A DNA stretch of 55,255 nucleotides, the filler included, from Platydemus manokwari (Eukaryota): NCBI GenBank assembly GCA_037951405.1. It is 4 parts of 4 records of this genome, joined end to end, with 100 filler letters (N's around TTAATTAATTAA, not from the genome) between each part and the next. Parts side by side here need not be neighbours in the genome. Positions count along the whole stretch, not along the records: positions 22,686 to 36,260 come from JBBMOY011684733.1; 3 more parts are not named here. One strand, given 5' to 3'. The position numbers and the translations under genes are program-made. A model generated the notes under the pieces. That model did not search any database. It had not been told where the DNA came from and worked only from the letters and a program-made list of their open reading frames with translations. Below, in pieces: positions 25,747 to 29,400 of the stretch (within the stretch, counting starts at the first letter, position 1; each line of letters opens with the position of its first letter).

Positions 25747-25822
25747 AGCCAATCAGCAACTACTCGTCAACCAATGGTAATTGTTCAATATTTTGTTGGT
25801 CCAAGGAGAAATGAACCAATAG
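25747..25822 (+). promoter_or_regulatory. Three CCAAT boxes directly upstream of the Smad-like ORF
   Basis: AGCCAATCAG (CCAAT at 25749), AACCAATGG (25771) and AACCAATAG (25816), all within 120 nt of the ATG at 25866. Confidence 0.45.
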
Positions 25823-25865
25823 TTATGATAATGAGCTCGATTATTCCAGTTTGTTCATAATTTTC

Positions 25866-26420
25866 ATGTTGTCCAAATTGAAAAATCATATCCTTAAGCA
25901 TGTAGATCGTGAAATGGATGGTGATCAACTTAAACTGAAATCGAAGAACATTCATTCACATTGGGGAAAAATCGAATTGTGGAACACAAATAAAGTGACG
26001 TGGAACACTTATATCGACGATTCATTTCTACCATTGCCCATACCACATAATCGATTGTGGCTGGAATTGGATTCTAATAAGAACGTCATTCTACATAACA
26101 AAGAATCGAAAGCCGTTTTCGTTAGTTCGGCAACTCTTCAGGAAAATGCCTTCTCCACCGGTAAATGGCCGATTGTTCGTGTATCAGCAGGCGAATCCAT
26201 TTTGGCTTTCAGCATGGACATTTTCAAACTTCTCTTAAAATCCGAAACTGAAACCAGACCAGGTCAGCTACCTCTCATTCATTCGGCCGTCATTCATATC
26301 AGCCCCCACAAAGGCTGGGGTCCAGGTTATAAAAGAGTGCAATTCATACAGTGTCCCATTCGTTATGAAATATGGCTGTCGTTGTCTGGGTTGTGTTTGC
26401 ATCGGAAAATGTCGAATTAA
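25866..26420 (+). CDS. Divergent inhibitory-Smad (Smad6/7-type) MH2-domain protein, apparently MH2-only, 184 aa
   Basis: SHWGKIELW ... LHNKESKAVFVSSATL ... VRVSAGESILAF ... VIHISPHKGWGPGYKRVQFIQCPIRYEIWL aligns with the Smad7 MH2 (SHWCVVAYW ... YNRSSYPIFIKSATL ... KVFPGFSIKAF ... [27 protein letters not shown]). No C-terminal SSxS. AATAAA at 26424. Confidence 0.8.
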   Translation: MLSKLKNHILKHVDREMDGDQLKLKSKNIHSHWGKIELWNTNKVTWNTYIDDSFLPLPIPHNRLWLELDSNKNVILHNKESKAVFVSSATLQENAFSTGKWPIVRVSAGESILAFSMDIFKLLLKSETETRPGQLPLIHSAVIHISPHKGWGPGYKRVQFIQCPIRYEIWLSLSGLCLHRKMSN

Positions 26421-29400
26421 CCCAATAAACCAATTTCTCAAATATTGTTTATCCCTACAAAAGAAGAACGCCACCACGTTCGACTGTACAAAAAATGATG
26501 TCTTATTGACAGATTATTAATGTTTTTTTTTCGTTCACAAATATTTTACAGCTCCAAACCATATATTGACAAAACAAGATTATTTTCTGCTTTTATAAAT
26601 CAAGTTCATGACATTATTGGAGAGATTTTCAAACGATGTCAGCGTTGTAATTAATGGCCACCATCAAACCTATCCACTATCCACATCGATAAATGTATTT
26701 TTATCGAACAAATGAGATAAATAATTTCTCGATTATTCAATATCGGAGATTATCGATTCACTGGCTGCACAGGATTTATTGCATTTATTAATCATGTAAA
26801 TAATAATGATAATAATAATAATAATAAATTGATTTACTTTTTTAGACTCTTGTTCTTATATTTATTACTTAATCATTGACTGACATTGAATAGAAATAAA
26901 AGAATAATATTGACAGATCGATTTGGTGCAATACAATTCCAAAACGATCCAATTAATATCAGTTCTAAAATTCACAGAAAATTTGAATTCATTAATCATC
27001 AATAAATGTTCGAAATCTAAATTTAATTTAATAGTTCTTAGTTGCCTAGTAACGGTTTCTTTCGTGACTTTTTCTGTTGCAACAGGACACCACCTGCCGT
27101 TTTACTGTTAAAATCGATGATTTTAGTCTTGTTGATCCGAAAACATTATGCCATTGAAGAGTGAATTTTGCTTGTGGTATCGTTCCAGTCATCATTGATT
27201 GATTAATCAATAAAATTATTGCCAACAGTTTAAAATCGAATAAAATACATATTATTAATGACGTCATAGACTTAATATTGATTTTATTAGTTGTGAATAA
27301 TATTTGTATCACAGATCACCAGTTCTCAAATGAAACCATTTAACGCCACAGTTAGCATGTTAGAAATCTTCGCATCTTTGGACAGAAGTTTTTCAATGTT
27401 TGCAGTAATAATTAAAATAATCACCATAAAAATTGAATCAGATATCAGTTTATTAATAATAAATTGAGATGACATCGAAACATTTTGGACTGCATTTTTA
27501 TATTGACGTTCAATTCCAAGTTTTATCGCACTGAATCTGAAAATACCAGTTGATATTGGCCAACAAATTTCCGTGACAAAAATCCATATGAAACGTTCTT
27601 TCATTTCGGATTGGGAAATTGTTGAGATTTAATCTAATCAATTTCTTCGATTTTGTAAAATAAAACGGAATTCGTTTTGCAAGTCTAACTCTTTGGAAAC
27701 ATAATATCAGTTTGGAGTGATTTGAAAATTTTAATTGAATACAAGTTTACAAAAAAATTTGATTTATCGATTACAATCACCATGACAATCACGTGACCCA
27801 GTGATACATGTGTGTGTATTGTAAATCCAATATGGCTTACTTAAATCACCTACGATACATATATTTGTGTTGTACATGAACAATTCGTGATTTTATAATA
27901 ATTTGAAATTAGATTCTAGCCATTATCAGAACAATAATAATAATGATTATTATTATTATTATCATTATTATTTTTTTAATAAATTACAATGTTATTTCTA
28001 CTATGACAACGAAATTATTGTTGAGAATTCTATTTAAATCAATAATCATTCATTTTGTAAAACAGAAACAAATCAAAATCGCCCCGAGAAATACTTTCTC
28101 CATATGATTACATTCATTGATTTTTAATAAATCTATTATCTATTTTTCTTTCACTTCGCCAAAATTAACTTCCAGCTGCCTACTTTTAAAGGGGATTTTA
28201 ATTGCTTACATTTTTTTTCAAAATTCAGCTCATTCATGTGTAACATCACCTGGCTGAACTCACATTGATAATGGGAACTATCTTAGAACAGAGGCGTCGA
28301 TAATGAGCTTTACTACAAACTATTTAGATGCTATATACAAGGCGGCAACTATTACGGGCAGTGAAATTGATATTTTTGATTTTCCAACATATTGGCAGGT
28401 GAAACAACGATATAAATCGAGAAAAAAAATATATCTGTTGGCAACAATATGCCATTGCGGCAAATAAATTTTGTTCTTCTATATGGACATCAGGTTTGTA
28501 CGAAGTGAAACTTCTTGTTTTGTACTGTCGGAATTGCCATCTATCCGTAAATGTGTTCATTGTTGACAGTTCTCTTTGCTTGAAAACAAGCGCTATTTTT
28601 GATACATATTTATATGATGTCGAAATCCATTTGACGATAGAGATTTATGTACTTGTTAATTCACTTTTCTCGGTGTTATATCAAAAGGTCGTCGCCGTAA
28701 ACTACTCTAACTTTCACCTGTACAAAACTATTAATACATAAAACGCCTTTAAAACGGCTTCAAAAACTAACATTAATTTAACAAAAACACTTAATGTTTC
28801 CAATTACTGTCGAGTATTAAGATCTGGCTTTGATTGGTGGAATTGGCGAGAAGATCATTGTTATTAAGTTCTTTGGCTCTATTTGTAACCAAAACAAGAT
28901 CTCATAAAGATCATCGATTTAGACTTACATCATTTATCGCGCACCAAGAAGTAAATAAAAAACATTAAAAATGACAATCAATAATTACTATTAACATAAT
29001 AATAATTATTATTATTATCATTATAAACTCAAATAACAAATCATCAAAATTTAATAAATCTCGACAGTTTGAAAGCAAAATCTCAGCAAGTCAAAAAACC
29101 TTGTGTGATTTGTTAGTCGCTGATAAAATTTCTCATCTCCAGTCATCCGTAAATAGGCATGTAGCTGAGCATAGCCACGTTAGCCGATGTATTTCAGGAG
29201 GAAAATCTCTGCAGGAAATTCATCAACAATCATTACCGAAAAGCAGTCAATTTAGGAAAAGCCGACTCAAAACTCTGCTGATGCTCAACGAATCTAATGA
29301 GTCACATCACTAACGAAATCGGTCGTCTTTTCCTCCTCATTGCAGCATCATTGAAGCTGTGTTCACTTGACCCACTTCTCTACAGCAGCACACATGATAA

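What the first reader, a model, noticed from the sequence alone, without database searches (positions are those of the whole stretch)
25747..26430. Compact intronless gene for an MH1-less, internally deleted inhibitory-Smad-like MH2 protein
Seen: a 184-aa ORF with about 30 N-terminal residues followed by an MH2 domain (SATL, SILAF, KGWGPGY.R, CP..EI), three CCAAT boxes just upstream, an in-frame TGA at 25812 and AATAAA 3 nt after the stop. Together these look like a self-contained ~700-bp gene. Known: Smad6/7 normally carry an N-terminal/MH1-like region and a PY motif and lack SSxS; MH1-less Smad-like proteins are rare (C. elegans DAF-14, arthropod Expansion/Rebuf). Against Smad7 recalled from memory, about 25-30 residues are missing between the first W motif and the L.L strand (helix-1 region), and ISFVKGWG has become ISPHKGWG. 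Inference: a lineage-specific, possibly retroposed minimal TGF-beta/BMP antagonist or receptor decoy that cannot recruit Smurf through a PY motif.
Basis: partly seen in the sequence, partly recalled or inferred. Interest (0 to 1): 0.72.

Follow-up and report, generated by a model that had tools for sequence, protein, structure and literature searches.

The report
Planarian smad6/7-2-type inhibitory Smad gene
This is an intact gene for a very short inhibitory Smad made of little more than a trimmed MH2 domain, 63% identical to Smed-smad6/7-2, a planarian gene already known to control photoreceptor number, so it is real but largely ordinary.

Summary
There is a 184-codon ORF at 25866-26420 (+). 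It matches Pfam MH2 at 50.9 bits, but only over profile positions 68-173. No MH1, PY or SSXS motif is present.

The ORF aligns end to end with SMED-SMAD6/7-2 (UniProt I3RSU2, 182 aa) at 63% identity, with the same MLSKLK start and the same internal gap. That gene is published (Gonzalez-Sastre et al. 2012): it is expressed in photoreceptors, and RNAi removes the anterior photoreceptors.

A search of 1.84 billion representative proteins found no other close relative. The next best hits are Smad6-like proteins of tapeworms and flukes.

A confident AlphaFold model matches the Smad7 MH2 best (Z 18.1). It shows that about 28-31 residues are missing, covering strand β4 and α-helix 1. Helix 1 is one half of the I-Smad "basic groove" that binds receptors.

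Retroposition is not supported, because cestode and trematode relatives also encode linker plus MH2 in one exon.

The source species is unknown.

Verdict: a new member of a known kind, of modest interest.

The parts
25866..26420 (+). Complete coding sequence, 184 aa plus TAA stop, of a smad6/7-2-type inhibitory Smad
   Evidence: ORF seen. It aligns end to end at 63% identity with SMED-SMAD6/7-2 (P0001, 182 aa), starting at the same MLSKLK.
25869..25916 (+). N-terminal helix (residues 2-17), specific to the planarian pair and not part of MH2
   Evidence: AF2 DSSP gives H2-17 with pLDDT about 70. MLSKLK..I.KH.D is conserved with P0001. No Pfam or profile match to other Smads before residue 60.
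25962..26378 (+). Trimmed MH2 domain (residues 33-171)
   Evidence: Pfam PF03166, 50.9 bits. The AF2 model matches the Smad7 MH2 7cd1 at Z 18.1, rmsd 3.0 over 145 residues. 70% identical to P0001 over this part.
26034..26054 (+). Short connector (residues 57-63, LPIPHNR) standing where canonical MH2 domains carry β4 (FCLGLL) and α-helix 1. Net shortfall is about 28-31 residues.
   Evidence: The canonical Branchiostoma Smad7 MH2 model has 35 residues, including helix 57-66, between β3 and β5. The window model has 7. HMM offsets against 7cd1 agree.
26307..26357 (+). L3-loop region (residues 148-164, HKGWGPGYKRVQFIQCP), the best conserved segment
   Evidence: K149, G150 and R157 are invariant, and W151, G152, Y155, C163 and P164 nearly invariant, across 96 I-Smad-like sequences. 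It lies between strands 142-147 and 165-171 in the model.
25812..25814 (+). In-frame TGA, 18 codons upstream of the ATG, closing the frame
25749..25820 (+). Three CCAAT boxes (25749, 25771, 25816), a candidate proximal promoter
   Evidence: Only marginally non-random, 44/1000 simulations. Function is inferred, not shown.
25840..25849 (+). Polypyrimidine/AG acceptor-like site 16 nt before the ATG. It may be a cis- or trans-splice acceptor of a short 5' UTR.
   Evidence: Sequence only. Not tested because no reads were available.
26424..26429 (+). AATAAA polyadenylation-like signal 3 nt after the stop

Best explanation
The ORF at 25866-26420 is an intact gene with a single coding exon, from a triclad planarian, and it belongs to the smad6/7-2 type of inhibitory Smad. 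It is either an orthologue in another species or a close paralogue of Smed-smad6/7-2.

The predicted protein has a short N-terminal helix followed by an MH2 β-sandwich. The sandwich keeps a strongly conserved L3 loop. It has lost the whole N/MH1 domain, the PY motif, strand β4 with α-helix 1, and helix 5 with the SSXS tail. These features are shown by sequence and by the predicted structure.

By homology with the published S. mediterranea gene, it most likely acts cell-autonomously in the photoreceptor lineage and nervous system to damp BMP signalling and so set the number of anterior photoreceptors.

The inferred mechanism is stoichiometric competition through the L3-loop face, most likely for the activated BMP type I receptor. 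It would not involve Smurf recruitment, and it would work with a weakened basic groove.
For: - MH2 match above the Pfam cut-off.
- 63% identity over 95% of the length to SMED-SMAD6/7-2, with the same start, the same end region and the same internal gap.
- P0001 gives the same truncated Pfam match, profile 68-173.
- The frame is closed upstream by a TGA.
- Identity is 70% in the MH2 part against 38% in the first 32 residues, the pattern of a constrained domain.
- In the PDB sequence-profile ranking, Smad7 scores 29.8 bits, Mad/Smad1 about 23, Smad2/3 about 19 and Smad4 about 13.
- In the structural ranking, Smad7 scores Z 18.1 and the other Smads 14.3-16.2.
- The nearest non-planarian relatives are flatworm and other proteins named Smad6.
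- In the tree, the window ORF and P0001 are sisters at 100/99, inside a flatworm group at 89/88.
- Function of the homologue: it is expressed in photoreceptor progenitors and photoreceptors, and RNAi animals lack anterior photoreceptors (PMC13322009; PMC9436907).
- Isolated Smad6/7 MH2 domains still inhibit BMP and TGF-β signalling (PMC2150897).
Against:
- The species is unknown, so orthology and paralogy cannot be told apart.
- α-helix 1, described as part of the receptor-binding basic groove of Smad6/7 (PMC7589189), is deleted. Receptor docking may therefore be weak or absent.
- The tree has only one R-Smad outgroup and long flatworm branches, so I-Smad placement rests mainly on rankings of scores.
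- The RNAi literature concerns the S. mediterranea protein, not this one.
Confidence: 0.85

Rival explanations
1. The ORF is only the last exon of a larger gene. Upstream exons that encode an N/MH1-like domain would be spliced into the acceptor at 25849, as in the long trematode relatives.
For: - Acceptor-like sites end at 25748 and 25849, and a GTAAGT donor stands at 25676 after a 98-codon open frame.
- Trematode relatives of 699-726 aa carry a partial MH1 (34-37 bits) ahead of the single-exon linker plus MH2.
- In those species the MH1 exon lies more than 6 kb away, so finding none in the 3.1 kb upstream here is weak evidence.
Against: - The S. mediterranea protein is not marked as a fragment, and it starts at the homologous Met, with its first six residues identical.
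- An in-frame TGA lies 18 codons upstream.
- The obvious splice chain 25675 > 25749-25776 > 25850 lands out of frame and hits a stop (my reading).
- tblastn with MH1-bearing relatives finds nothing elsewhere in 22686-36260.
- The upstream 98-codon frame has no similarity to Smads (hhalign probability 0.1%) and no atlas hit.
Confidence: 0.07
2. It is a non-functional relic: a retrocopy or decaying duplicate of an I-Smad that happens to keep an open frame.
For: - The protein is truncated and internally deleted, and it is very divergent. Only 28 proteins reach E <= 0.001 in 1.84 billion.
- An exact 13-nt direct repeat, GTTTTTTTTTCGT, flanks the unit at 25665 and 26522.
Against: - The same 182-184 aa architecture, with the same deletion, is kept at 63% identity in S. 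mediterranea, where the gene is expressed and has an RNAi phenotype.
- There are no frameshifts or stops in 184 codons of 29% GC DNA.
- Conservation is concentrated in the MH2 core and L3 loop.
- There is no poly(A) tract before the 3' repeat, and the repeat is a low-complexity T-run.
- A single-exon MH2 is the norm in flatworm relatives.
Confidence: 0.05
3. It is a real gene, but it does not act at the receptor. Having lost helix 1 and therefore half of the basic groove, it would instead bind another partner through the L3 loop or the new N-terminal helix. That partner could be a phospho-R-Smad, Smad4 or a nuclear cofactor. This reading shares the gene identity with the best explanation, so its confidence overlaps with it.
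For: - Helix 1 is missing, and it is reported as part of the receptor-binding basic groove.
- The N-terminal helix is conserved between the two planarian proteins and has no counterpart in other Smads.
- A 2026 paper lists the S. mediterranea homologue among eye transcription factors.
Against: - Loss of helix 1 and helix 5 also damages both faces of the canonical Smad trimer interface. This rests on established MH2 structural knowledge and was not tested here.
- No binding data of any kind are available.
- The opposite eye phenotypes of smad6/7-2 and bmp knock-down fit any level of pathway inhibition.
Confidence: 0.3

Closest known systems
Smed-SMAD6/7-2 (Schmidtea mediterranea, UniProt I3RSU2; Gonzalez-Sastre, Molina & Salo 2012, Int J Dev Biol 56:155)
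   Same: - Length 182 against 184 aa, with the same MLSKLK start.
- No MH1, PY or SSXS.
- The same missing β4/helix-1 segment and the same truncated Pfam MH2 match (profile 68-173).
- A near-identical L3 region.
- 63% identity overall and 70% in the MH2 part.
   Different: - 37% of residues differ.
- There is a 4-residue indel in the linker after the N-terminal helix, and the C-terminal tails differ.
- It is either another species' orthologue or an undescribed paralogue. Which one cannot be decided here.
Neodermatan flatworm I-Smads (Schistocephalus 'Smad6' A0A183T2T7, and Anoplocephala, Paragonimus, Opisthorchis, Dicrocoelium and Fasciola MH2 proteins)
   Same: - They are the next best hits, at 52-72 bits.
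- They share a derived L3 and β11 signature, GKGWGP.Y.R......CP.R.E.W, in place of the canonical CPCWLE.
- Their linker plus MH2 is also encoded in one exon.
- They group with the planarian pair in the tree.
   Different: - In the region between β3 and β5 they keep an LCL..LV strand and carry long insertions, rather than a deletion.
- The long forms keep a partial MH1.
- Identity to the window protein is only about 30%.
Vertebrate Smad7 / Smad6 and Drosophila Dad (canonical I-Smads)
   Same: - MH2 fold: best structural match is 7cd1, Z 18.1.
- No SSXS tail and no helix 5.
- The conserved KGWG..Y.R L3 loop is present.
- The isolated MH2 domains of these proteins suffice for some inhibition.
   Different: - There is no N domain and no PY motif, so no PY-dependent Smurf recruitment.
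- β4 and α-helix 1 are deleted. From my recollection of the human sequence, this segment carries the Smad7 basic-groove lysines K312 and K316.
- FVKGWG has become PHKGWG and CPCWLE has become CPIRYE.
- Only 20-23% identity.
Smed-SMAD6/7-1 (I3RSU1, 340 aa)
   Same: It is the other planarian I-Smad, and its Pfam match is also MH2 only.
   Different: - About 27-31% identity to the window protein.
- It keeps an N-terminal half with a CINPFHW MH1-like motif.
- It sits on a very long branch.
MH1-less Smad relatives: arthropod Expansion (N-MH2, PDB 4r9p) and C. elegans DAF-14
   Same: The architecture is MH2 only or MH2 dominated.
   Different: - The Expansion structure matches worse (Z 12.6) than every true Smad MH2 (14.3-18.1).
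- No sequence hit to either reached the list of 28.
- DAF-14 was not tested directly.

Membership tests
Inhibitory Smads (Smad6/7/Dad) | MH2 domain present | tested here: met
   Pfam PF03166, 50.9 bits against a cut-off of 25, though only profile 68-173. The AF2 model has an MH2 fold, Z 18.1 to Smad7.
Inhibitory Smads (Smad6/7/Dad) | No C-terminal SSXS phosphorylation motif; short tail after the last strand | tested here: met
   No SS.S anywhere. The protein ends LHRKMSN, 13 residues after strand 165-171.
Inhibitory Smads (Smad6/7/Dad) | Closer to Smad6/7 than to R-Smads or Smad4 | tested here: met
   PDB profile scores: Smad7 29.8, Mad/Smad1 about 23, Smad2/3 about 19, Smad4 about 13 bits. 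Structural Z: 18.1 against 14.3-16.2. The named relatives are Smad6. The tree has only one R-Smad outgroup.
Inhibitory Smads (Smad6/7/Dad) | Divergent N domain with MH1-like remnant and PY (PPxY) motif for Smurf binding | tested here: not met
   Only 32 residues precede the MH2. There is no Pfam MH1 match and no PP.Y. tblastn finds no MH1-like exon in the piece.
Inhibitory Smads (Smad6/7/Dad) | Basic groove formed by L3 loop plus α-helix 1 | tested here: not met
   The L3 loop is present, but helix 1 and β4 are absent. 7 residues stand where the canonical model has 35. The definition of the groove is from PMC7589189.
Inhibitory Smads (Smad6/7/Dad) | Inhibits BMP/TGF-β signalling | not testable with these tools
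   There is only literature on the S. mediterranea homologue: smad6/7-2 RNAi animals lack anterior photoreceptors, and bmp RNAi animals regenerate larger eyes with that subpopulation expanded.
Planarian smad6/7-2 subfamily | End-to-end similarity to I3RSU2 with the same architecture (about 30-residue N-terminus plus helix-1-less MH2) | tested here: met
   E 4.9e-71, 63% identity, 95% coverage. Profile hit of 385 bits against 71.6 for the next protein. Sisters in the tree at 100/99.
Planarian smad6/7-2 subfamily | Expression in photoreceptors and CNS | not testable with these tools
Processed retrogene | Intronless copy of an intron-bearing parent, with a poly(A) relic and target-site duplications | tested here: not met
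   The relatives' linker plus MH2 is also a single exon. There is no poly(A) relic downstream. The only flanking direct repeat is a 13-nt T-run.

The most novel reading that the evidence does not exclude
The smad6/7-2 lineage may be an I-Smad that has given up the canonical modes of inhibition. It has no Smurf recruitment and no helix-1 basic groove, and its trimer interface is crippled. It would instead work through its L3 loop and a planarian-specific N-terminal helix on a different partner, for example by sequestering phospho-Smad1 or acting with a nuclear factor in photoreceptor neurons. A further possibility is that the window comes from S. mediterranea itself, in which case this would be a third, undescribed I-Smad paralogue.
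Probability: 0.25. Interest if true: 0.5.

Novelty: new member of a known kind. Interest (0 to 1): 0.3.

Why it matters
This locus adds a second sequence to a gene type previously represented by a single database entry. That second sequence shows the odd architecture is conserved and therefore functional: no N domain, no PY motif, and no β4 or α-helix 1.

The comparison gives three concrete results:
- The natural "minimal I-Smad" is about 150 residues of MH2 with an intact L3 loop.
- A conserved N-terminal helix appears to be the only added element.
- The subfamily is related to the I-Smads of parasitic flatworms.

For planarian eye and BMP biology, it gives a direct hypothesis to test on how smad6/7-2 inhibits signalling without the usual receptor-binding groove. 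It does not reveal a new kind of system.

Tried and rejected
- **Sequencing runs and reads.** Expression, the transcription start and splicing remain untested.
- **Exact-sequence look-ups.** The look-up of encoding contigs found nothing for the window protein or for P0001. The S. mediterranea locus could therefore not be compared, and synteny and dN/dS could not be done.
- **Word search with Smed-SMAD6/7-1.** It returned only the query itself.
- **Upstream 98-codon frame, 25383-25676.** Pfam gave only a sub-threshold DUF4807 match, and the atlas gave no usable hit. A weak BLAST match to an MH2 segment (E 0.006 pairwise, 0.15 in tblastn) was not confirmed by hhalign (probability 0.1%). I rejected it as a Smad exon or duplicate.
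- **MH1-like exon in the piece.** tblastn with 18 Smads found none. The positive control was weak, because the MH1 exon is also not within 6 kb in the cestode and trematode loci.
- **Retroposition signature.** I rejected this reading.
- **Rfam and tandem repeats.** Neither showed anything relevant.
- **The 2012 primary paper.** It is not held. Its content is taken from citing papers and, where I say so, from my memory of the abstract. The review PMC9436907 says that knock-down of either gene causes an abnormal DV axis. This conflicts with my recollection that no DV defect was seen, so I do not rely on that sentence.
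Full report
**Observation**

The piece 22686-36260 is AT-rich, about 29% GC, rising to 37% over the finding. Its longest open frame, 201 codons from stop to stop, is 25815-26417 on the + strand. Within it, the ATG at 25866 opens a 184-codon ORF that ends at the TAA at 26418-26420.

- SATL at residue 88, SILAF at 111, KGWGPGY at 149 and CPIRYEI at 163-169.
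- An in-frame TGA at 25812.
- CCAAT at 25749, 25771 and 25816.
- AATAAA at 26424, 3 nt after the stop.

Pfam scores the protein at 50.9 bits (E 2.9e-13, cut-off 25) on MH2, but the match covers only profile positions 68-173 of 174. The CCAAT triple is only marginally unusual: 44 of 1000 Markov simulations of the piece reach three within 72 nt.

**What it is**

The word-index protein search returned one hit, SMED-SMAD6/7-2 of Schmidtea mediterranea (UniProt I3RSU2, 182 aa, E 4.9e-71). The two proteins align end to end at 63% identity. They share the same first six residues (MLSKLK), end in the same region, and have the same short stretch where other Smads have about 30 more residues. Identity is 70% across the MH2 part (residues 33-171) and 38% in the first 32 residues. 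P0001 gives the same truncated Pfam match.

The protein type is therefore already known. The gene was cloned and studied by Gonzalez-Sastre, Molina and Salo (2012, Int J Dev Biol 56:155; cited). I could not read that paper because it is not held.

Citing papers report the following:
- smad6/7-2 is expressed in the CNS and eyes.
- It is high in post-mitotic photoreceptor progenitors and in photoreceptors.
- smad6/7-2 RNAi animals lack anterior photoreceptors, while bmp RNAi animals regenerate larger eyes with that photoreceptor subpopulation expanded (PMC9436907; PMC13322009).

**Relatives**

I ran the exhaustive profile search because the claim "lineage-specific" rests on an absence of relatives. 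A profile of the two planarian proteins against 1.84 billion representatives gave only 28 proteins at E <= 0.001. P0001 scored 385 bits. The next best scored 71.6 bits and matched only profile positions 60-178.

The next nine hits are mostly parasitic-flatworm proteins: the cestodes Anoplocephala and Schistocephalus (named Smad6) and the trematodes Paragonimus, Dicrocoelium, Opisthorchis and Fasciola. Copepod Smad6 follows. Oyster Smad6-like and SMED-SMAD6/7-1 come further down.

The flatworm proteins share a derived signature with the window protein, GKGWGP.Y.R......CP.R.E.W, where canonical I-Smads have CPCWLE.

I built a maximum-likelihood tree of the MH2 parts (32 rows, LG+C20). It places the window ORF and SMED-SMAD6/7-2 as sisters at 100/99. 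They sit on a long stem inside a flatworm group (89/88) within the Smad6/Dad set, with one R-Smad (Mad) as outgroup. Branches are long and there is a single outgroup, so this supports I-Smad affinity but does not prove it.

Independent rankings agree:
- Against PDB sequences, the two-protein profile scores Smad7 at 29.8 bits, Mad/Smad1 at about 23, Smad2/3 at about 19 and Smad4 at about 13.
- Structurally, Smad7 (7cd1) gives Z 18.1 (rmsd 3.0, 145 residues, 23% identity). Other Smads give 14.3-16.2, the Expansion N-MH2 domain gives 12.6, and IRF domains give about 10.

**Anatomy of the protein**

The AF2 model, built on a 96-row alignment, is confident (pLDDT 82.3, pTM 0.79). Its elements are:
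- An N-terminal helix at residues 2-17 (pLDDT about 70).
- A poorly ordered linker.
- Strands at 34-40, 43-50, 54-56, 64-68, 74-78 and 84-88.
- A short helix at 95-98.
- Strands at 104-106 and 111-115.
- Helices at 117-125 and 137-141.
- A strand at 142-147, the L3 loop at 148-164, and a last strand at 165-171.

I modelled a canonical I-Smad MH2, Branchiostoma Smad7 residues 316-491, in the same way (pLDDT 87.7). Between its third strand and the β5-β6 hairpin it has 35 residues, which hold the FCLGLL strand and helix 1 (model residues 57-66). The window protein has 7 residues there, LPIPHNR. The HMM offsets against 7cd1 give the same shortfall of about 28 residues.

It removes β4 and α-helix 1, and S. 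mediterranea shares it. In the cestode and trematode relatives the same region is expanded rather than deleted, so it is a hypervariable part of flatworm I-Smads.

There is no PP.Y and no SS.S motif. There is no Pfam MH1 match. No MH1-like coding segment appears anywhere in the piece by tblastn with 18 Smads.

**Gene structure**

The case for a complete CDS in one exon rests on three points:
- The S. mediterranea protein, which is not marked as a fragment, starts at the homologous Met.
- The TGA lies 18 codons upstream.
- Both proteins end in the same region.

Acceptor-like AGs end at 25748 and 25849, and a GTAAGT donor follows a 98-codon open frame at 25676. However, the obvious splice chain ends out of frame, and that upstream frame has no detectable similarity to Smads or anything else. 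The acceptor 16 nt before the ATG could serve a 5'-UTR intron or spliced-leader trans-splicing, which is known in planarians. That is an inference. Reads could not be obtained.

The lack of introns does not indicate retroposition. In Schistocephalus (888-nt gene, 295 aa) and Fasciola (1137 nt, 378 aa) the linker plus MH2 is also one uninterrupted exon. The window locus has no poly(A) relic. Its only flanking direct repeat is a 13-nt T-run.

**Mechanism**

Shown here:
- An intact ORF.
- An MH2 fold with a conserved L3 loop.
- Absence of the N domain, PY motif, helix 1, helix 5 and SSXS.

From the literature:
- Isolated MH2 domains of Smad6 and Smad7 inhibit BMP and TGF-β signalling, though less potently than the full-length proteins (PMC2150897).
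- I-Smads dock on type I receptors through the L3 loop and a basic groove made of L3 plus α-helix 1 (PMC7589189).
- The S. mediterranea homologue and bmp have opposite effects on anterior photoreceptor number.

Inferred: the protein is a small stoichiometric inhibitor of BMP signalling in the photoreceptor and neural lineage. It would act through its L3-loop face, most likely on the activated type I receptor. It cannot recruit Smurf through a PY motif. Because helix 1 is gone, its receptor grip must differ from that of Smad6/7. By my recollection of the human sequence, helix 1 carries the Smad7 lysines K312 and K316. The conserved N-terminal helix may compensate. Alternatively, the protein may target Smads or a nuclear partner instead. 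I put the receptor-competitor mechanism at roughly 45% and a non-receptor partner at 25-30%.

**Novelty**

This is not a new kind of gene. It is a new member (orthologue or close paralogue) of the planarian smad6/7-2 type.
- The finding that the odd architecture is conserved between two planarian sequences.
- The precise structural extent of the deletion (β4 plus α-helix 1).
- The link to neodermatan I-Smads.
- The point that single-exon MH2 coding is general in flatworms.

The source species is unknown. The nearest homologue and the base composition point to a triclad planarian.

Noticed in passing
window 25383-25676 (+): A 98-codon open frame directly upstream of the gene. It ends at a consensus GTAAGT donor (25676-25681) and is followed 70 nt later by a polypyrimidine/AG acceptor (25747-25748). 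It has no Pfam, atlas or Smad similarity. It could be an exon of an unknown upstream gene, a 5' exon of this gene, or chance.
   Followed up: partly
window 25665-25677 and 26522-26534 (+): An exact 13-nt direct repeat, GTTTTTTTTTCGT, brackets the whole unit (CCAAT boxes, ORF, AATAAA). It is low-complexity and there is no poly(A) next to it, so it is probably chance rather than a target-site duplication.
   Followed up: partly
window 22687-22746 (-): A short frame reads LRSFLGLCNYYRRFIKDYAL. From my own knowledge, this is a motif typical of Ty3/gypsy-type retroelement pol proteins. It is cut off by the edge of the piece, and the frame upstream of it is broken by stops, so it looks like a decayed retroelement relic.
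   Followed up: partly
window 26422-26434 (+): Two further CCAAT motifs (26422, 26430) overlap the AATAAA just after the stop. Five of the 14 + strand CCAATs in the 13.5-kb piece lie within 700 nt around this gene.
   Followed up: partly
window 29713-29809 and 36191-36260: ATA trinucleotide microsatellites, with 32 and 23 copies. The second runs into the edge of the piece.
   Followed up: no
L002 9272-9496 versus 5896-7134 (Fasciola gigantica contig SUNJ01002145.1): The first 75 residues of a 487-aa cluster member (P0034) match DNA downstream of the MH2 exon on the same strand. This suggests a mis-assembly or mis-prediction in one of the Fasciola records.
   Followed up: no
P0012 cluster (210-aa proteins, 21 members, up to 44 contigs each, unnamed Logan/ENA sources): A full-length MH2 domain (Pfam 136 bits, profile 2-174) in proteins of only about 200-250 aa from an unidentified, frequently sequenced organism. 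This is another apparently MH1-less Smad-like family, or else a recurrent partial gene call.
   Followed up: no
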